A DNA stretch of 63,583 bases, the filler included, from Bigelowiella natans CCMP2755 (Eukaryota; Protista; Cercozoa): NCBI GenBank assembly GCA_000320545.1. It is 4 parts of 4 records of this genome, joined end to end, with 100 filler letters (N's around TTAATTAATTAA, not from the genome) between each part and the next. Parts side by side here need not be neighbours in the genome. Positions count along the whole stretch, not along the records: positions 47,446 to 61,689 come from ADNK01001771.1; 3 more parts are not named here. One strand, given 5' to 3'. Position numbers and translations under genes: made by a program. Below, piece by piece: positions 47,446 to 61,981 of the stretch (the stretch's first letter is position 1; each line of letters starts with the position of its first letter). Below the pieces are notes generated by a model, which saw nothing but the letters and a program-made list of their open reading frames with translations, was not told the origin of the DNA and ran no database searches.

Positions 47446-47623
47446 TTCCTGGGGAATTTCGCTTCCCCCCCCCCCCCCCCCCTCTTTTTATTCCTGCACT
47501 ATTACCCCAGAGGAAGGGACCGAGAGCCTTTTCAGCTGCCAGGTTTTTTTGTGTAGTATAGTAGTAGCAGTAGTAGTAGAAGCAGTAACGTTAAATGATA
47601 ACACATTCGCATACAATATAACA

Positions 47624-47659
<36 letters not shown>

Positions 47660-47795: not shown

Positions 47796-48583
47796 TCAGC
47801 AGAAACGCCGTGTTAGGAAGAGGGCGAGTGGTGAGAAATCAAGCTACTGCTTATGATGGAAAAACACGGGTGCTTAAACGCTAACGACGAATCCGCTGTT
47901 TTCGTTCATGAAGTTTCTCCAGGGATCTTGATATCGTCTCCTCGGCTCATGCTACAACAGCTACTACTGCTACTGCAACTTCCACTACTGCTGCTAGTGG
48001 TAGTACCTCGTTGTGCACGGGGGTAGGATGGTGCCAGAACTTCCACAATTCCGGCATCTCAGGAGCTTCCACAACTTCCACCTGATGATGATGGTGATGG
48101 TGATGGTGGTGATGATGGTGATGATGGTGATGGTGATGATGACGATGATGATGATGATGATGATTACGATGACGATCGCAACAAACAGAGCTACTATCTC
48201 CCTTAAAAAACAAAGTAAAAATGGAGAAAGTGTCTATTCGGTGTACCTTCAACCTACTATTCACTGCATCGTGCGCCCAGAGGCCGCTGAAAGAAGTAGA
48301 TTTCAGTGATAGGAGAACGTGAGCGAGTTTCTTCTTGCGTGGATGTGTCAGCTATCATGGCTTTTTTGGGGTGCAATTGTATTATGAAGACAACGACACA
48401 ACAACAACAACAACAAACTATCGCCTTGTAGATTCAATAATCATCGGTGCCTTCGCTGCGTGAATGCATTCAGATGGCATTCGTACAAAGAGAATCGAAG
48501 ACGGTTTATGCTATCATATCACCACACCTCTGGCCCCAGTACATTAGCAATCTCACCTAATAGTAGTAGTTGTAGCAAATTTA

Positions 48584-48620
<37 letters not shown>

Positions 48621-49623: not shown

Positions 49624-50609
49624 CACACACAAGACACGCAACACGCATGCGCGCAGTATTTGCATGATTCTCGGAATATCAGCCGTGACTCTAGCACGAA
49701 ACGCAACTACTTGGAATCCATTCCGAGCCATCGTGCTCTGCCGCTGGCCTTGAGTACGGTTCCCGCTGCTGGCAGAGGGTGAGCGTCACGAACTCGCTTT
49801 ACTGCTTCCTCGACACTGCATCAGGATGAGAAGGGAAGAAGGCGAGTGGGGAGGGAGAAAGGAGGGGATTAGGCAAATGCTTCGCCATCGGGGTCACACA
49901 CGCAGGGCTCACAGTATCACTGAGCGCGAGCAAAATGTGCGAAGAATGGAGAGCGTTGTGGGAAATAATTGGGATGAGGGCGCATCCTTTTCTCTCCTAC
50001 CAACAAAAATATTCACATCCGCAATAGCCTAGGTGGCCCTCTTTTAGGTGTTCTCGCTTCAACAAATTACTACTGCTACTACCACCTGATCGGTGCAGGC
50101 TCCCCCCCCGCAACACCGCTGTTAGCGTAAGACCTTCTCGACCTCTGCCTTCGTCGCGCAGCGCAACCGCGTGTCTCGCGCCGCCGTTGTGAGAGAAATG
50201 AGTTTTGGCCGCCCATTTCTTTTCTTCCCTGACCATGTCTTCCCAGCAAATGTGTTAATTCATGCTGCTGCTGCTGCTGTGTGCTCCACGTTGAGAAGAG
50301 GGGAGGGGGGAGGAATTGTGGCTGTGCTGGAGAGAAGGCGCGCGTCTGGATGCGTGGTGAGGTATTTCTCTTTCGTAATCGTAACCCGGGGAATAATCCT
50401 GATGGTGTCTCGGGGTTTCTTTCTCCTTTAAAGGCGAACATATGCGGCCTGGAAGTTGCACGCGTGTTTGGGGGGGGGGAGAGCATAAAGCCGCTGGTGC
50501 TGCTCTTCACCGATGCCACCAGGAACAACACCAAGCTGTTCATAGCCAGGAGAAGAATGAATCTCGGTGCGTGGCGCTCACGCGCCACAGGAGGGATGGG
50601 AAGCTCCAT
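47796..50609 (-). CDS. Hypothetical protein with a bipartite (signal + transit-like) N-terminal leader, probably plastid-targeted
   Basis: The N-terminus MELPIPPVARERHAPRFILLLAMNSLVLFLVASVK is followed by an S/R/P-rich stretch. Phase-compatible exons give YCGCEYFC|CDTVSP|AVEEAVKRVRDAHPLPAAGTVLKASGRARWLGMDS|KWIQTNAPDGSVHVSIESPHVSVSW|GFDMETDDVWEIDFNG, then GLWAHDAVNSRLK|VEVVEAPEMPELWKFWHHPTPVHNE|HEPRRRYQDPWRNFMNENSGFV. Some internal joins and the 3' end are uncertain. Confidence 0.55.
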
Positions 50610-51458
50610 CCAGGAGGTACGGGGGGTGCCGATGGGCGCGGAGCTCGGCCTGAGAAATTGTGTGGAGAGATTTAGGAGAAAGGCCTGTGTTTGTTGCCTG
50701 CGACATGCTTTTTCGCAGCCATGATGACAGAAATGTGCTCGAATCTTTCTTGAGCGGAAAGGAAGCTCCCCCGAGGTTTCCTCCGGGCGGCCACGTGTTT
50801 TTCAGCGAAAGCCCCTGTTTTGCAAGGTCCAGAAGCGTCTCTGGACTTCCTTTGATTTGGGCTTTCCCACTGGGGTGTCTGTTGCATCGTCGTGCAACGT
50901 CACGTGCGATGCAGGGCCACTTGTGCGCGAACTGTGAACTTGCATTTCTGTCCTCCACTGTGCCTTCACGAGTGTGTGCTCCAAGCGTTGCGATGGGACG
51001 GGAACCCAGCACTTGCAATTGTGGGTGTTCCTGTGTGTCTTCCACGTTGTTGCACCCTGCTGTCGCAGTGGGGTGCATCACGTGTCCATGGTGTGCACCC
51101 ACACGAAGTGGAGACCCCTGGATCCAACCAACAGCACGTGCGTCGTTCCTGAGCAGGCCCGTCTGACATCGACACTTGTCCCATTTGTGTTTGCATTGCA
51201 CCTCCTGTGAGCTTGGGCCGATCATTGACACCCAGGCCTCATCCAAGAACTTGTGGAAACGTCTTTCACACAGTTCGACGTGTCCAACCTTCCTTTTCAT
51301 TCCTCAGCTAGCTCAGCGCCAGAGCGGCTCTGCGAGCAAAAGAAGCTGGACCAGTGGAGGAGATCAAGAACACACGAGGGCAACGGGAACAGCAAAAAGT
51401 GTGGCACGTGTCGCAAACAATCCCTCCCTCCTGTTCATGTGTGGTGTGGTGACATGCA

Positions 51459-51619
51459 AGCAATGACATGCAACAACGATCATCACAACCGCCAGTGGCG
51501 GCATCTGCGATGTGGGCAGAGCCCACCTGCTCGCAAAGCGATGCGACTGTGTTGTGCGACTGCATCATTGTGCTGCCGTTGCGGCTGCATCGTGTTGCAT
51601 TGTTGCACTTGTGTTTCAC
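51459..51619 (+). repeat. Inverted repeat, left arm
   Basis: Reverse complement of 54007-54151; the 65-nt core 51488-51552 is identical to the reverse complement of 54062-54126. Confidence 0.95.
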
Positions 51620-52049
51620 AGGGTGCTTTTTTGGGGGAGGGGGTGTGCACACGTGCAGCATGCACACACGTGATGTGCACATGTGTGCACACGTGTGTGC
51701 ATTGTGCATCATGATTTGAAAAGTTTTGGTTTTTGCAATGCCACACAATCCCTTGTTGATCATGAAATGAAGGAGGTCAGAAAAAAGCACTGATCAAAGT
51801 GGGGGTCCAAAAAAAAATGAAGAAGCATGCGATGTCATCATGTGCTGTGTGCCGTGCCGTGCCGTGCTGTGTGCTGTTCTGTTGGGAAGCGATGTGCGGT
51901 GCTGTGCGACTGCCATGCATGTTGCGATGATGGTGTGCATGTGAAGCGAAGCAAAAGGATTTGGCAAAGTTTGTTGTCACACATCAACAACAGAAGGGTG
52001 CTTCTGAAGTGAAAGGTCATCTACATGTCAATTGTTCCAACCACATTTT

Positions 52050-52714
52050 CTCCAAACTGGACCCGGTGTGTGTGCGGAAGCAGTCTACGTGGCGATGAGA
52101 AGATGCTCCCCAGATTTGAGAGCACAATCACCATCATGCCCACCAACAGCAAACAGTTTGCCATCCCCAACCGCCACACCCGACAAATTCCTCTCAGTGT
52201 TCACATCAGGGATTTTCTTCCACCCTTCTTTGAGATAGTCCTCAATCGCCTTCTTCGTTTCCTGCTGTTTCCCCTTGGGTGAACTCAGTTGCGAGATTCG
52301 CTCCAGCTTTTCTTCCAGCTCCCGGATGCGGTTGTTGGCCTCCTCCTCTGCCTTCTGCTCATCCTCCAACAATTTCCTCTCATCTGCTTCTGCCTTCTGC
52401 TTCTCCTCTAGCAATTTTCTCTTATCCGCTTCTGCTTTCGCTTCTGCTCTCGCTTCAGCCTCCCTGACGGCCTCTTCTTTGTTCTTCTCGGCCATCTCCA
52501 ACTTCTCTTTAAGCTCCTCTGCTTCGTCGTCCAATCCAAGTTGCTTCAAAAACTGGAGAGAACTCATTTTAGGAGCAATCTTATTGAGCCCTTCGGCCAG
52601 TTGACCTGCCTTGGGTCGCTTGGTTCTGTCTGTGTTCAGGCACAATTTTATGGTTTCCCTGAGAAACGGGTCCGTCTCATCCATGTCATCATAATTCAGC
52701 CTCCCATTTTTCAT
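52050..52714 (-). pseudogene. Remnant of a protein kinase C-lobe tail + coiled coil + one Kelch repeat
   Basis: ORF 52085-52714 contains FLRETIKLCLNTDRTKRPKAGQL (kinase subdomain XI-like), E/K/A-rich heptads, and WKKIPDVNTERNLSGVAVGDGKLFAVGGHDG (Kelch). It stops after one blade. Upstream sequence has stops in all frames. Confidence 0.7.
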
Positions 52715-53235
52715 GGCACTCTTCTTACCCGATTTCGAAATTGACCTTTGTTACATTGTTGCGACATCTTGATGGGAGCTTTCTTTCTAGCTTTCTAGCT
52801 GTCTGCCAGTTCCAATTGAAAGTTGCAAGCTGTGGCAAGGGGGAAGGACAACTTTGTGGCCTGCATGGGCCGGACAGCTGCCAACCAGAAAATTGAATGC
52901 TTTTTTGAATGGCTTTTTGTCATTGATGGGGTTCGGAAAACTCAAAAACTAGCAATGTGCTTCCGAACCTTGGCAACTTCACCCCTGAAACTTTCCATTC
53001 CATGCATGCATTTTCCAGAAACATCACAAGTGTTTGGGATGTGTTTCGCCGAAGACTTCGAGGGGCTTCTGAGAAGAATGCTCTTTGAATGGATTCGAAT
53101 GTGCCATTCCTTGTCGGCCACCTCATCCACCACTGTTCTCATCTAGCCGATGCACATTGAGGACGTCATCTGCTCGGTTGAGGAGGGGCATCGTCTGTTC
53201 TTTGCCTGAGAAAGGCAATGTTTGCATGCAATCAG

Positions 53236-53271
<36 letters not shown>

Positions 53272-53844
53272 TGCGGCCGTTGCAACAGTAATCGTTAACA
53301 AACCAGCTATTACTGTCGCAAGACAAGGCAATTTTGCAGCCTGCTCTAGCTGCTGCTTCATCTGCACTTCACAGAACTCTCGTGCATTCCCTCCCCCCCC
53401 CCCCCCCTTCCCTTCCGTCGCCCCCCCACGATCCATCATCCTCATCGTCATTGAATTCGAAAGAAATATCCATCTGTGCGTGCGGGTTCAGATTCCAATG
53501 GAAGAAGTTGCGAAGATTGCCGAAATACTTAAGGTGAAGATCAAATGCAGAGCCCATCCTACCGCGTCATGTGCTAATCTCCTCCCGTAAAAATCTGTTC
53601 CTTTTTCTTTATACTGCTGCCCAGATTACGCTGCCAAAATTGAAGACGCACCATCGCGAGGTTGGCGTGAAGATGAGCAGAGAAAAGAGGGCACAGTGTC
53701 CCTGAAAGCTCCGCTTGGTCTCCCCAAAGTGAAGCGTCTCTCCCGACCTTCTTAGCAAGAGCGAAAGGAGAACTCCAAAGGCCTCTGATTCGAAGGGATT
53801 TCCTTCCATGTTTCTCTCTCACCGCTCACACGAGTGTGCATGCA

Positions 53845-53885
<41 letters not shown>

Positions 53886-54006
53886 GTGTGTGCACGTCTG
53901 GACGTGTGCTTTGGTTTGATTTCATCCGTGCTTGCAATTCTCAAAGGGCATCACTGCCATGCGATGCATGAGCCTTTCATTCTGCACACATCGGTTTGAT
54001 CCGCGC

Positions 54007-54151
54007 GTGAAACATGAGTGCAACAATGCAACGTGATGCAGCACAATGATGCAGTCGCATGACACAGTCGCATCGCTTTGCGAGCAGGTGGGCTCTGCCC
54101 ACATCGCAGATGCCGCCACTGGCGGTCATGATGATCATCATTGTCATTGCT
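54007..54151 (-). repeat. Inverted repeat, right arm
   Basis: Matches the left arm apart from a 4-nt and a 12-nt indel and transitions at pyrimidine-purine dinucleotides. Confidence 0.95.
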
Positions 54152-54785
54152 CACACATCACACACGTGTGTGATCTGGCTTTGACAGGAGTGGAAAAAAA
54201 AAGCTTGATTTCAATCGAGCTTTTGTTCGAATGCATGAGCCCAATGATCTTGCTTTGGGCTTTTTCAAGTTTCGCTCACGACTTCCACCTCAGCAGTGTG
54301 AGGCAGTTTCGCTCGCTGCTCGGTCAACAGGCAACACGTGATGTTTCCGCGCTACGAAATTGATCAAAACAAGTGCAATGATGGATGCAACGTGTGCTGG
54401 CATTGCTGTGTCTGTTGTGCAAAATGCATGTGCCACGTGTCTGGATGTTGCACACACACACAGCACGCACTCACATGACAAATGTTGTGCATTTGCACAC
54501 ACCTGCTAGCTAGCTAGCTTGGACTCCTGAAGAGCAATTGGTCAATTCATGACAAGATGTCACATGCATGCCACGCATCAATGAATCAAATTGCAACCAC
54601 TTGTCATGCGTATGTGGCCCAGAAAATGCATCATGAAGATGAACTACTACTGTTGCTCCTGAAATGCATGCTAGCATGTTCGAACCAATCACGAGTGGAC
54701 AATTCGACCCAGAAACGCATCCATGAGGGGGAACATCGCATATAACTGCAAATTGAGTGACTCAAAATTCATCACGACGGCACGT

Positions 54786-58385: not shown

Positions 58386-60007
58386 ATGGGAGCATGCGTG
58401 TCGGATCTGGACGATGCAAGCAGGCGCCTTTCACAGGTTCGGATATTTTCTCATTTGGCCATATTTAAATTCATTTACATCAAGAGACTTCTGTCAAAAA
58501 AAAAACACTCACACAGGAGGCAATGAGAAACAAGCAAATAAACAGACAACTATCGTTGGAAGCAAAGCAAGGGCGTTTACATCATAAACTTCTGCTACTT
58601 GGTGCTGGGGAGAGTGGGAAGTCCACATTCTTGAAGCAGCTAATCCGAATACATGACAAGGGCTATGATTTGGATGCCAGAAAGGCATTTACACAGTCGA
58701 TTTATAAAAATATACTAAGCTCTATGCAAAGCATCTTAGAAGCTATGGAGACAAACGGTTGGGAACTGGACAAAAAACTTGGGGGTGCACTGAATGTTTT
58801 CAAAGAAGAAGTGAAGAAAGAGGAAAACTCGTGGACAATAGATGAAGAAATTGGTGATGCTGTTGAAACTTTGTGGAAAGACAAAGGGGTCCGTGACGCC
58901 TTCTCGAAGAGAGATTTACCAGAAGTTGGATTCTACTTATTTGATGGAGCAGAATATTTCTTCAACAAAATCGACACAATAAAAAAGGACGACTACACAC
59001 CTGATGAAGAAGATATCGTTCGCTGTCGTATAAGGACCTCCGGAATAGTGGAAAAGGTTGGGCAACAGTATTCCATAATTCAAGGCAGTGTATGCTGACA
59101 ATGCTGACAAAAATTTTCATTATAGGGATTCGATATCAAGGGGAATCATTTTAGGTTCAATAATTAAAACCAATAACCACCTTTGCGATGAACATAATCT
59201 GTTTAATTTTAGGGTATTTGACGTTGGTGGGCAGCGAGCAGAGCGCAGAAAGTGGATACACTGCTTTCAAAATGTGACTGCTGTCATGTTTATTGCATCA
59301 TTGAGTAGCTACAATCAGGTTATAATTCTCTATATTTTGTTCGGATAGTTTCGATATTATTTTTTTTGTAACATATTCTCCCTAATTCAGCTTTTTATTT
59401 CTCCTTTTCTCTCTCCTCCCCGCTCTTCTCTCCTGCATTCACATCTTATCTTTTCGAGATTCTAATATAAGGACATAAGTTTTTATGAAGATGTTATATT
59501 CGCTCAGAATTTGTTTGAGGATCAAAGATCAAACAGAATGACGGAAGCTATTCTTCTTTTCGAGGACATCAGCAATTCGCACTGGTTTCAAGAAACTGCA
59601 ATGATCCTCTTTCTCAACAAGTACGATATTTTCAAAGAGAAGGTACAGAAGGTTTCGATAACCCAGTGCCCAAGTCTGCAAAATTTTAAGGGAAAGACAG
59701 AGGAAGATAGTCTCGCCTACATCCAAATGGTTTTTGAGACCTCCTGTCAGAATCCGCTTCAGAGCGTCTGTAATAATTGATTCTTCTTCACAGATACCGA
59801 GATGTATTGAACACATCTATTTGACAATATTTAGATACGCACTTCACCACTGCAACGGACAAGAGAAACGTTGAATCTATTTTTGATGCTGTACAAGACA
59901 TTGTTATTCGGAAAAGCATGGCGGAAGCTGGATTGCTGGTCGAATCATCCTCTTACACTGAAAATGATCCTGGATCCAGGATCCTGCCTGGCACGTATAT
60001 TGCGTGA
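58386..60007 (+). CDS. Heterotrimeric G-protein alpha subunit; exons 58386-58436, 58517-59056, 59126-59154, 59213-59318, 59508-59769, 59835-60007
   Basis: MGAC lipidation motif; [15 protein letters not shown] (G1), RCRIRTSG (G2), [17 protein letters not shown] (G3), ILFLNKYD (G4) and THFTTATD (G5). All introns are GT-AG and phase-consistent. Confidence 0.96.
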
Positions 60008-61365: not shown

Positions 61366-61981
61366 TTTCTGCGCCCTTGGCCCTTTAATTGCTCGAAATC
61401 CGCCTCCACCTGTGTCCACGGACAAGGTATATGTCAGACGATATCAGCAGCCAATGTTGTGTCCGCATGAGAGTCTCCACGCAGTAGCAGACTCTTCGGC
61501 TGAAAAAGAGTGGGAAAGCTGGGGGGGGGGGGGGGGAAAAGGTCCAACAGCCCATAAAACACCCCCCCCCCCCCCGCGTTCCCCCTCTTTTTTTGGGGGG
61601 GGGGGGGGGGGGGGGGGGGGGCTCTCATGGGGGCACAAAATTGGGGGGGGGTATCGTGTGACATATGGGGGGGGGGGGCGCGATTTTGTNNNNNNNNNNN
61701 NNNNNNNNNNNNNNNNNNNNNNNNNNNNNNNNNTTAATTAATTAANNNNNNNNNNNNNNNNNNNNNNNNNNNNNNNNNNNNNNNNNNNNGTACCCGGGGA
61801 TGTTTGCGAGCCCCCACACAGAGCAAGGAGTACTCTCACCCCCCATACCATTAGGAACATAGTAGGTGCGAAGTTTCTTTTAAAAATCATAGTCACGTAA
61901 GCACTCTTTCTCATTCTTAGTCTCTCTCCCGCACTCTCTCTCGCCCTCTTCCTGATTTTTGGCGAGGGTAAACAGGATTAA

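What the first reader, a model, noticed from the sequence alone, without database searches (positions are those of the whole stretch)
50675..52021. TpA is erased over 1.35 kb: candidate 'reverse-RIP' A-to-G hypermutation system acting on repeats
Seen: reading line by line, 50675-52021 (1347 nt) contains one TpA (51309, inside CTAG), where roughly 80 would be expected at even base composition. CpG is plentiful and TG/CA, TGCA and CATG are in excess. Neighbouring genes have ordinary TpA. Established: fungal RIP is C-to-T at CpA and creates TpA; 5mC decay removes CpG. Neither fits. Inference: a process converted TA to TG/CA (A-to-G on either strand, as adenine deamination would) specifically in repetitive or foreign DNA. 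That would be a genome-defence mechanism running opposite to RIP. The alternating purine-pyrimidine scramble at 51643-51712 looks like a converted (TA)n microsatellite. I cannot check whether this has already been reported in other algae.
Basis: partly seen in the sequence, partly recalled or inferred. Interest (0 to 1): 0.9.

Follow-up and report, generated by a model that had tools for sequence, protein, structure and literature searches.

The report
TpA-erased island in Bigelowiella natans
A 4-kb stretch of this chlorarachniophyte alga's nuclear DNA has had almost every TA step turned into TG or CA, the scar of a TA-specific hypermutation process that a 2026 preprint has already shown at work in the same species.

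Summary
Window 50675-52021 has 1 TpA where about 74 are expected. TG and CA are each about 1.8 times expected. A second TpA-free block lies at 53753-54353. The whole span 50256-54507 is TpA-poor, while the flanks are ordinary.

The piece is nuclear DNA of Bigelowiella natans, or a near-identical strain.

- Two inverted copies inside the TpA-free blocks differ only by transitions inside pyrimidine-purine steps. Six of these are TG/CA double flips.
- A gene fragment in the island has lost TpA to TG or CA at 6 sites relative to a 96% identical transcript. There are no changes in the reverse direction.
- A sister gene has replaced 8 of 8 tyrosines by His or Cys.

A 2026 bioRxiv preprint (Mettrop et al., doi 10.64898/2026.01.13.699255) reports de novo TpA-to-TpG/CpA hypermutation in B. 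natans mutation-accumulation lines and TpA-depleted clusters across the genome.

The enzyme, the targeting rule and the defence role remain unproven.

One nuance is local. This island shows no viral or transposon hallmark. It consists of an inverted duplication plus a fragment of a multicopy kinase-Kelch family, and three other members of that family are on the preprint's TpA-depleted lists.

The parts
50256..54507 (.). Whole TpA-poor, TG/CA-rich island. It has a partly depleted left shoulder at 50256-50673 and a partly depleted centre at 52022-53752.
   Evidence: 500-nt windows have TA o/e of 0.00-0.44 here, against 0.5-1.2 outside. 1-kb windows pass the preprint's thresholds (Rho TA <=0.43 and Rho CA+TG >=1.52) for window starts 50546-51646 and 53146-54246.
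50675..52021 (.). Left TpA-free block, which is the finding itself.
   Evidence: 1 TA against 73.8 expected. TG o/e is 1.79 and CA o/e is 1.75. GC is 0.53, against 0.46 for the whole piece.
53753..54353 (.). Right TpA-free block. Only one further TA (54353) occurs before the GCTA repeat at 54505.
   Evidence: A 600-nt gap between successive TAs. Rho TA is 0.17 and Rho CA+TG is 1.62 for 53446-54445.
51444..51619 (+). Left arm of the inverted duplication.
   Evidence: blastn gives 176 nt at 82% identity to 54165-54007. In the 156-nt aligned core, all 16 mismatched bases are transitions inside pyrimidine-purine steps. In purine/pyrimidine code the match is perfect over 107 nt, 51470-51576.
54007..54165 (-). 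Right arm of the inverted duplication.
   Evidence: Same evidence as the left arm.
51643..51712 (.). Alternating pyrimidine-purine mosaic of TG, CA and CG units. It is a candidate converted (TA)n microsatellite, with its core at 51673-51702.
   Evidence: A 30-nt perfect Y-R alternation made of 8 TG, 5 CA and 1 CG. This is the same length class as the intact (TA)15 at 47627-47656 and (TA)18 at 48582-48618 in the flank.
52088..52744 (-). 5'-truncated copy of a multicopy gene: protein-kinase C-terminus, coiled coil, and the first Kelch motif. The ORF is 52085-52714 (209 aa) and equals EukProt entry P0121.
   Evidence: Pfam Kelch_1 hit. tblastn to P0122-P0129. 96.4% nucleotide identity to transcript L003. 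Relative to L003 the copy lost TA to TG or CA at 6 sites, with no reverse changes.
51963..52087 (-). 3' untranslated region of that gene copy. It runs about 60 nt into the TpA-free block.
   Evidence: Transcript contig L003 (JGI sample 3300017095) is 100% identical over window 52160-51963, where the contig ends.
50581..51300 (-). First 'exon' (240 aa) of the 836-aa gene model P0132. It is probably a prediction artefact of stop-poor TpA-free DNA.
   Evidence: P0132 residues 1-240 match at 100%. An open run of 241 codons is expected by chance for this composition (P=0.125), and there is no codon-position bias. No Pfam hit and no homologue among 1.8 billion representative proteins.
51309..51310 (.). 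The only surviving TpA in the finding's range, inside GCTAGC.

Best explanation
The island 50256-54507 is the scar of a TpA-specific T:A-to-C:G transition process that operates locally in the Bigelowiella natans nuclear genome. It has run to saturation at 50675-52021 and 53753-54353. TpA reads the same on both strands. A hit on the top-strand A therefore gives TG, a hit on the bottom-strand A gives CA, and hits on both give CG.

Shown here:
- TA is erased and TG and CA are gained.
- Only transitions separate the two inverted copies.
- TA loss relative to paralogues runs in one direction only.

Shown in the literature: the process is active today, at about 6e-7 per site per generation, in two virus-derived regions of the same species. 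It was seen only in some experimental lines.

Inferred, not shown:
- The agent is an adenine deaminase acting on DNA. The preprint names an ADAT2-like protein, Bn78255. From my own knowledge, the natural TadA/ADAT2 substrate is A34 preceded by U33, which would fit a 5'-T preference.
- The agent is directed to particular regions by chromatin, small RNA or duplication.
- It serves to disable invading or duplicated DNA.
For: 1. Size of the effect. 1 TA against 73.8 expected, with TG and CA at about 1.8x. Restoring about 73 conversions would bring GC from 0.530 to 0.476, close to the piece's 0.464 (arithmetic).

2. Inverted copies. Over 156 aligned nt, all 16 mismatched bases are transitions and every one lies in a pyrimidine-purine step. 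There are 6 CA/TG double flips, 2 CA/CG and 2 CG/TG, and 7 CpG are kept in both arms. In purine/pyrimidine code the match is perfect over 107 nt. If the ancestors had been CpG, the ratio of single hits to intact sites (4:7) predicts about 0.3 flips, against 6 observed. If the ancestors were TpA driven to saturation, half of the ancestral sites should flip. Six flips then imply about 12 ancestral TA, close to the 8.7 expected at flank density.

3. Window copy against transcript L003. Over 760 nt with 27 mismatches, L003 has TA where the window has TG or CA at 6 sites, and there are no reverse cases. TA counts are 17 in L003 and 10 in the window. More distant paralogues L001 and L002 show the same direction.

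4. Family level. Comparing P0129 with P0127, 8 of 8 Tyr became His or Cys. Transitions at TpA explain 13 of 35 residue differences, against at most 5 for any control dinucleotide. P0127, P0126 and P0123 are on the preprint's lists of TpA-depleted genes.

5. Locality. Intact (TA)15 and (TA)18 microsatellites lie 2-3 kb away.

6. Direct observation of the process in B. natans mutation-accumulation lines, and 124 TpA-depleted clusters across the genome.
Against: - No less-mutated copy of the TpA-free blocks themselves was found, so their ancestral TA content is inferred, not seen.
- The island carries no viral or transposon hallmark, although the preprint ties the process to foreign DNA.
- On a fixed 1-kb grid started at the piece's edge, only two non-adjacent windows pass the preprint's thresholds, so the island may not be one of its 124 clusters.
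- TG and CA show no strand-coordinated runs (z -0.26 and -0.82). That gives no support for processive single-strand editing, although saturation would blur such runs.
- Sequence cannot tell whether the enzyme acts on A or on T.
- No experiment has shown a defence role.
Confidence: 0.85

Rival explanations
1. The mutation pattern is the same but the chemistry differs. The thymine of TpA is modified, for example oxidised to 5-hydroxymethyluracil or otherwise hypermodified by a TET/JBP-like enzyme, and then miscopied as C. This gives T>C at TpA instead of A>G.
For: TpA is its own reverse complement, so T>C on one strand cannot be told from A>G on the other. All the tests here fit both readings equally. 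From my own knowledge, dinoflagellate 5-hydroxymethyluracil is enriched at TpA.
Against: The preprint offers no evidence for thymine modification in chlorarachniophytes. It does find an ADAT2-like candidate carrying the residues linked to DNA editing. Nothing here tests this rival directly.
Confidence: 0.1
2. Selection rather than mutation. TpA (UpA in RNA) is purged from untranslated or regulatory DNA because it destabilises transcripts or creates spurious TATA, polyadenylation or stop signals.
For: Part of the block is transcribed as a 3' UTR. From general knowledge, UpA is mildly under-represented in most transcriptomes. The paralogous transcripts L001-L003 have TA o/e of 0.41-0.44.
Against: - An o/e of 0.01 over 1.35 kb is far beyond any known UpA avoidance.
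- Other non-coding DNA in the same piece keeps normal TA and long (TA)n tracts.
- The two inverted copies resolved the same sites differently (TG against CA). That is what independent mutation gives, not what conservation gives.
- In P0127 the process destroys kinase tyrosines.
- De novo mutations have been observed directly.
Confidence: 0.02
3. Decay of methylated CpG (CG to TG or CA), acting on a segment that was TA-poor to begin with, for example DNA acquired from a TA-poor donor or a contaminant.
For: TG and CA are in excess by about 130 while TA is short by only about 73. CpG is short by about 30, so some CpG decay probably contributes.
Against: - CpG o/e is 0.68, close to the piece's overall 0.75, so decay is not saturated.
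- The flip statistics of the inverted copies reject CpG ancestors, with about 0.3 flips expected and 6 seen.
- Paralogue comparisons show TA, not CG, at the changed sites.
- The block is flanked on one contig by genes of the same alga, and an independent transcript crosses its edge, so it is not a contaminant.
Confidence: 0.02
4. GC-biased gene conversion at a recombination hotspot raised GC and removed TA as a by-product.
For: GC is higher in the island (0.53-0.57) than in the flanks (0.38-0.47). The mosaic identity between L003 and the window hints at gene conversion among paralogues.
Against: The loss is specific to one dinucleotide. AT (o/e 0.85), AA (1.40) and TT (1.06) are retained while TA is 0.01. 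Biased gene conversion has no such context specificity.
Confidence: 0.01

Closest known systems
TpA-targeted hypermutation of integrated viral sequences in Bigelowiella natans (Mettrop et al., bioRxiv 2026, doi 10.64898/2026.01.13.699255)
   Same: Same species. Same signature: TpA lost, CpA and TpG gained, transitions only, locally clustered. Paralogues of the gene fragment in this island are on that study's TpA-depleted gene lists.
   Different: The preprint's two actively mutating regions are an NCLDV insert and a virophage insert, and both still hold many TpA (3.3% and 9.2% of dinucleotides). This island is an end state, with about 0.07% TpA in the block. It has no viral or transposon hallmark and contains an inverted duplication plus a host-type gene fragment. 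Whether it is one of the 124 reported clusters could not be checked, because Table S10 is not held.
Repeat-induced point mutation (RIP) of fungi
   Same: Local, dinucleotide-specific, transition-only hypermutation that riddles selected DNA and wrecks reading frames. Here duplicated DNA is involved: inverted copies and a multicopy gene family.
   Different: RIP is C>T at CpA and creates TpA while lowering GC. This process destroys TpA and raises GC. RIP needs duplication and a sexual cycle. The preprint's main target is single-copy, and its mutations arose in vegetative lines.
ADAR hyper-editing of double-stranded RNA, and ADAT2/TadA adenine deaminases
   Same: A-to-I is read as G, and a 5' U/T neighbour is preferred. 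The inverted repeat here could form a hairpin RNA.
   Different: The changes here are fixed in nuclear DNA on both strands. From general knowledge, ADARs are confined to animals. No enzyme has been tied to the process.
APOBEC/AID cytosine-deaminase hypermutation of viral and retroelement DNA
   Same: Host-driven, context-specific deamination proposed as a defence against invading DNA.
   Different: APOBEC/AID gives C>T (G>A), lowers GC, and leaves strand-coordinated clusters. Here the change is A>G/T>C at TpA, and TG and CA show no strand-coordinated runs.

Membership tests
B. natans TpA-depleted / CpA+TpG-enriched regions (Mettrop et al. 2026) | [quoted passage not shown] | tested here: met
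   Sliding 1-kb windows pass for starts 50546-51646 and 53146-54246. The windows 51446-52445 (0.08 / 1.75) and 53446-54445 (0.17 / 1.62) pass on the grid.
B. natans TpA-depleted / CpA+TpG-enriched regions (Mettrop et al. 2026) | Cluster definition: at least 3 consecutive passing windows on the scaffold's 1-kb grid | tested here: inconclusive
   With a grid started at the piece's edge, only 2 non-adjacent windows pass. The true scaffold phase is unknown, and the preprint's cluster table S10 is not held.
B. natans TpA-depleted / CpA+TpG-enriched regions (Mettrop et al. 2026) | Substitutions are A>G / T>C at TpA only | tested here: met
   Inverted copies: 16 of 16 mismatches are transitions in Y-R steps, with 6 TG/CA flips. 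Paralogue TA to window TG/CA: 6 against 0. Family level: 8 of 8 Tyr to His/Cys. These are indirect scars, not de novo events.
B. natans TpA-depleted / CpA+TpG-enriched regions (Mettrop et al. 2026) | Target is of viral or other foreign origin | tested here: not met
   No Pfam domain of viral or transposon type, no relative in IMG/VR, and no protein homologue for the open frames of the TpA-free blocks. Heavy mutation could hide such an origin.
B. natans TpA-depleted / CpA+TpG-enriched regions (Mettrop et al. 2026) | Elevated de novo mutation rate in mutation-accumulation lines | not testable with these tools
   This needs the scaffold coordinates and the lines' reads.
Fungal RIP | C>T at CpA, creating TpA and lowering GC | tested here: not met
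   The direction is opposite. TpA o/e is 0.01, CpA o/e is 1.75, and GC is raised to 0.53.
Fungal RIP | Acts on duplicated sequence | tested here: inconclusive
   The island holds an inverted duplication and a fragment of a multicopy family whose other members are also TpA-depleted. The rest of the blocks have no detectable second copy in the data at hand. The preprint's main target is single-copy.
CpG decay after cytosine methylation | CpG strongly depleted, and TG/CA gained at former CpG | tested here: not met
   CpG o/e is 0.68 against 0.75 for the piece. The flip statistics reject CpG ancestors.
ADAR-type or ADAT2/TadA-type adenine deamination | A is the edited base and inosine is the intermediate | not testable with these tools
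   TpA is palindromic, so sequence cannot separate A>G from T>C. The enzyme is not encoded in this piece.

The most novel reading that the evidence does not exclude
The trigger may not be viral origin as such. It may instead be duplication or hairpin-forming inverted repeats, recognised through homology or double-stranded RNA as in RIP. This island has no viral hallmark. It consists of an inverted duplication flanking a 5'-truncated copy of a multicopy host-type kinase-Kelch gene. At least three other members of that family are on the published TpA-depleted lists, one of them with every tyrosine converted. If this reading is right, the process polices gene-family expansion and pseudogenises host paralogues. 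It would also inflate the gene catalogue with stop-poor artefactual models.
Probability: 0.25. Interest if true: 0.7.

Novelty: already known. Interest (0 to 1): 0.45.

Why it matters
A eukaryote that erases one dinucleotide from chosen stretches of its own chromosomes is a rare kind of genome editing. It is the mirror image of fungal RIP and may be a DNA-level relative of ADAR or APOBEC defences. The process has already been reported for this species.

This locus adds three things:
- A clean saturated example with an internal control. Two inverted copies resolved the same ancestral sites independently.
- A hint that host-type duplicated genes, not only viral inserts, are hit.
- A practical warning. 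TpA-free DNA has almost no stop codons, so gene predictors call long false exons in it.

Tried and rejected
- **Rfam.** At gathering thresholds there were no hits. At E<=1 on the island there were only sub-threshold microRNA-like matches to the TG/CA mosaic.
- **Inverted-repeat core as a structured RNA.** Its folding energy is not better than shuffled sequence (z -0.91).
- **Pfam.** Scans of 20 open frames of the island found only the Kelch motif.
- **Protein searches with frames of the TpA-free block.** There was no homologue for 51229-51711(+). For 50581-51303(-) the hits were only the locus's own gene model and one low-complexity protein.
- **IMG/VR.** Three scans found no viral relative.
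- **Metagenome collection.** A scan for the inverted-repeat core used Y-R wildcards at every TG/CA, so that unmutated TA copies would match. It found 0 hits. A protein-guided scan for paralogue DNA also found 0 confirmed hits.
- **Exact-protein look-ups.** Look-ups for P0121, P0132 and P0127 found no genomic contig, so no further B. natans genome could be fetched.
- **Strand-coordinated editing.** The runs test on TG against CA was negative.
- **Coding potential of the 241-codon frame.** Rejected.
- **Purine/pyrimidine-coded self-comparison.** It found no further hidden copy inside the piece apart from microsatellites.

Full report
**Observation**

The range 50675-52021 (1347 nt) holds a single TpA, at 51309 inside GCTAGC, where 73.8 are expected from base composition. 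TG is at 1.79 and CA at 1.75 times expectation.

Ten thousand shuffles never gave fewer than 46 TA. At the TA density of the flanks, the Poisson probability of one or fewer is about 1e-31. TGCA, CATG, TGTG and CACA are 3-5.5 times expectation and TATA is absent.

The feature is larger than reported, however. There is a third TA-free gap of 600 nt at 53753-54353. The whole of 50256-54507 is TA-poor, with 45 TA in 4.25 kb. The rest of the piece has TA o/e of 0.5-1.2.

**Origin of the DNA**

The piece is eukaryotic nuclear DNA. It carries a G-protein alpha subunit gene whose best named relative is from the chlorarachniophyte Amorphochlora.

The 209-aa ORF at 52085-52714(-) is identical to a EukProt entry. 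Its 90%-identity cluster includes a protein named EP00466 Bigelowiella natans, jgi/Bigna1/147384. Its paralogues are jgi/Bigna1 models.

A JGI transcript contig, L003, is 96.4% identical to 52722-51963(-) and 100% identical over the last 200 nt. I therefore take the organism to be B. natans or a near-identical strain.

The transcript also crosses about 60 nt into the TpA-free block. That excludes contamination or misassembly at this edge.

**Anatomy of the island**

From left to right, the island contains the following.

- *Left TpA-free block, 50675-52021.* The 836-aa gene model P0132 places its first 240-aa exon at 51300-50581(-), wholly inside this block, and continues through exons down to 47500 and beyond the piece's edge. 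That exon is very probably an artefact:
  - Only TGA stops remain in TpA-free DNA, so an open run of 241 codons is expected by chance (P=0.125).
  - There is no codon-position bias.
  - There is no Pfam hit.
  - There is no homologue among 1.8 billion representative proteins.
- *Gene fragment, 52088-52744(-).* This is a 5'-truncated copy of a multicopy gene encoding a protein kinase, a coiled coil and Kelch repeats. Only the kinase C-terminus, the coiled coil and one Kelch motif are present.
- *52750-53750.* Unassignable sequence with microsatellites.
- *Right TpA-free block, 53753-54353.*

The two TpA-free blocks contain an inverted duplication, 51444-51619 against 54165-54007.

**Test 1: the inverted copies**

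The well-aligned core spans 156 nt and has 16 mismatched bases.

- All 16 are transitions, and every one lies within a pyrimidine-purine step.
- They comprise six CA/TG double flips, two CA/CG and two CG/TG.
- Seven CpG are conserved in both arms.
- In purine/pyrimidine code the arms match perfectly over 107 nt.

A TG/CA flip has only two one-step ancestors, TA or CG.

If the ancestors were CpG, the ratio of single hits to intact sites (4 to 7) gives a per-copy decay probability of about 0.22. That predicts about 0.3 flips, whereas six are seen.

If the ancestors were TpA driven to completion, half of the ancestral sites should flip. Six flips then imply about twelve ancestral TpA in 156 nt, close to the 8.7 expected at flank density.

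The duplication therefore predates the conversion, and the two copies were converted independently.

**Test 2: the gene fragment against paralogues**

Against L003 (760 nt, 27 mismatches), L003 has TA where the window has TG or CA at six sites, three of each kind. The reverse never occurs. TA counts are 17 in L003 and 10 in the window. The more distant paralogous transcripts L001 and L002 show the same direction on small numbers.

**Test 3: the gene family**

P0129 is the product of L003. P0127 is jgi/Bigna1/43804. They are 86% identical.

- All eight tyrosines of P0129 in the aligned region are His (4) or Cys (4) in P0127, which has no tyrosine at all.
- Using the L003 codons, 13 of 35 residue differences are exactly what T>C and/or A>G at a TpA predicts. 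No control dinucleotide explains more than 5.
- 13 of 19 codons with an internal TA have a changed residue.

**Other consistent observations**

- The 30-nt run at 51673-51702 alternates pyrimidine and purine perfectly and is a mosaic of 8 TG, 5 CA and 1 CG. Transition-only conversion of a (TA)15 would give exactly this. Intact (TA)15 and (TA)18 lie 2-3 kb away at 47627 and 48582. This is suggestive but not provable.
- Restoring about 73 conversions would lower the block's GC from 0.530 to 0.476, near the piece's 0.464 (arithmetic).
- TG and CA are interspersed without strand-coordinated runs. This argues against a few long processive single-strand events, although saturation would blur such a signal.

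**Literature**

- 231 of 302 nuclear point mutations fell in two regions, an NCLDV insert and a virophage insert.
- The rate there was about 6e-7 per site per generation.
- 230 of the 231 were A>G or T>C, and these fell on TpA.
- The hypermutation occurred only in some lines.

The preprint also reports:

- 324 TpA-depleted coding sequences.
- 470 genes that are both TpA-low and CpA+TpG-high.
- 124 clusters of such 1-kb windows.
- An ADAT2-like deaminase candidate, Bn78255.

It compares the process explicitly with RIP and with ADAR/APOBEC defences. Four full-text searches found no other report.

Three paralogues of this island's gene fragment are on the preprint's lists. Gene 80879 is in Table S6, 43804 is in Tables S6 and S8, and 145496 is in Table S8.

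By the preprint's thresholds, sliding 1-kb windows over both TpA-free blocks qualify. On a grid started at the piece's edge, only two non-adjacent windows pass. Whether the island is one of the 124 clusters cannot be said, because Table S10 is not held.

**How it most likely works**

*Shown.* A local, TpA-specific, transition-only conversion to TG, CA and occasionally CG. It is saturated in two blocks, partial between them, and absent 2-3 kb away.

*Shown in the literature.* The process is active and intermittent in this species.

*Inferred.* An adenine deaminase acts on DNA with a 5'-T preference, and the inosine it produces is copied as G. Hits on either strand of the palindromic TpA give TG or CA. 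From my own knowledge, the natural substrate of TadA/ADAT2 is A34 preceded by U33, which fits that preference.

Because TpA is its own complement, a thymine-directed chemistry giving T>C would leave the same scar and cannot be excluded from sequence.

The rule that targets the process is unknown. Selection against UpA, CpG decay, biased gene conversion and contamination are each contradicted:

- by the dinucleotide table;
- by the flip statistics;
- by the paralogue comparisons;
- by the transcript that crosses the block's edge.

**What this locus adds**

The island shows no viral or transposon hallmark. What can be recognised is an inverted duplication and a truncated copy of a multicopy host-type gene family, several members of which are TpA-depleted.

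Against it, the preprint's main target is single-copy, and heavy mutation could have erased a foreign origin here.

**Verdict**

The phenomenon is already known from a 2026 preprint, so this is a further and unusually clean example, not a discovery.

Noticed in passing
window 50581-51300 (-): The 836-aa gene model P0132 starts with a 240-aa exon that lies wholly in TpA-free DNA. An open frame of this length is expected by chance there, because TAA and TAG cannot occur. It has no codon-position bias and no homologues. Gene catalogues of this alga probably contain many such false exons and genes in TpA-free DNA.
   Followed up: yes
window 50256-54507 (surviving TAs, e.g. 51309, 52409, 52788, 52796, 52950, 53144, 53347) and 54505-54519: Among the 45 TAs that survive in the island, CTAG contexts are over-represented (18% against 6% outside, Fisher p=0.01, uncorrected for 10 contexts) and ATAT is under-represented. 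The only TA in the finding's range is in GCTAGC, and a (GCTA)n repeat marks the island's right edge. CTAG may be a poor substrate.
   Followed up: partly
P0127 (jgi/Bigna1/43804), compared with P0129 from L003:52-1836: An annotated 286-aa protein-kinase model has no tyrosine at all. All 8 Tyr of its 86%-identical paralogue are His or Cys in it, and several Ile are Met or Ala. It is probably a hypermutated pseudogene annotated as a gene.
   Followed up: yes
L003:1199-1958 against window 52722-51963: The transcript contig is 100% identical to the window over long stretches (52631-52331 and 52160-51963) but differs in two patches (52722-52640 and 52290-52170). Its first 1198 nt (kinase N-terminus) have no counterpart in the piece. 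It is either a chimeric assembly of paralogous transcripts or a sign of gene conversion among family members.
   Followed up: partly
window 52140-52172 and 52245-52307 (-), compared with P0123 and P0126: Two JGI gene models of paralogues contain peptide stretches that match the window's DNA in a different reading frame from the Kelch/coiled-coil frame, at 100% over 11 aa and 90% over 21 aa. These models are therefore frameshifted, and the paralogues are similar at the DNA level.
   Followed up: partly
window 47627-47656 and 48582-48618: Intact (TA)15 and (TA)18 microsatellites lie in the neighbouring gene region, 2-3 kb from the TpA-free block. They show how local the erasure is.
   Followed up: yes
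window 58386-59152 (+) and onward: G-protein alpha subunit gene with introns. A short first exon at 58386-58424 encodes MGACVSD. The main exon is at 58484-59098. The best named relative is Amorphochlora amoebiformis at 54-58% identity.
   Followed up: partly
window 47465-47482, 53389-53407, 61521-61536, 61595-61621; also 61429-61666: Long homopolymer runs (C18, a C-rich run of 19, G16, G27) and a 238-nt imperfect palindrome (65% self-complementary) near the right end of the piece. Their function is unknown.
   Followed up: no
window 52347-52449 (-): A 42-nt tandem repeat (2.5 copies, 83% matches) within the coiled-coil coding part of the kinase-Kelch fragment.
   Followed up: no
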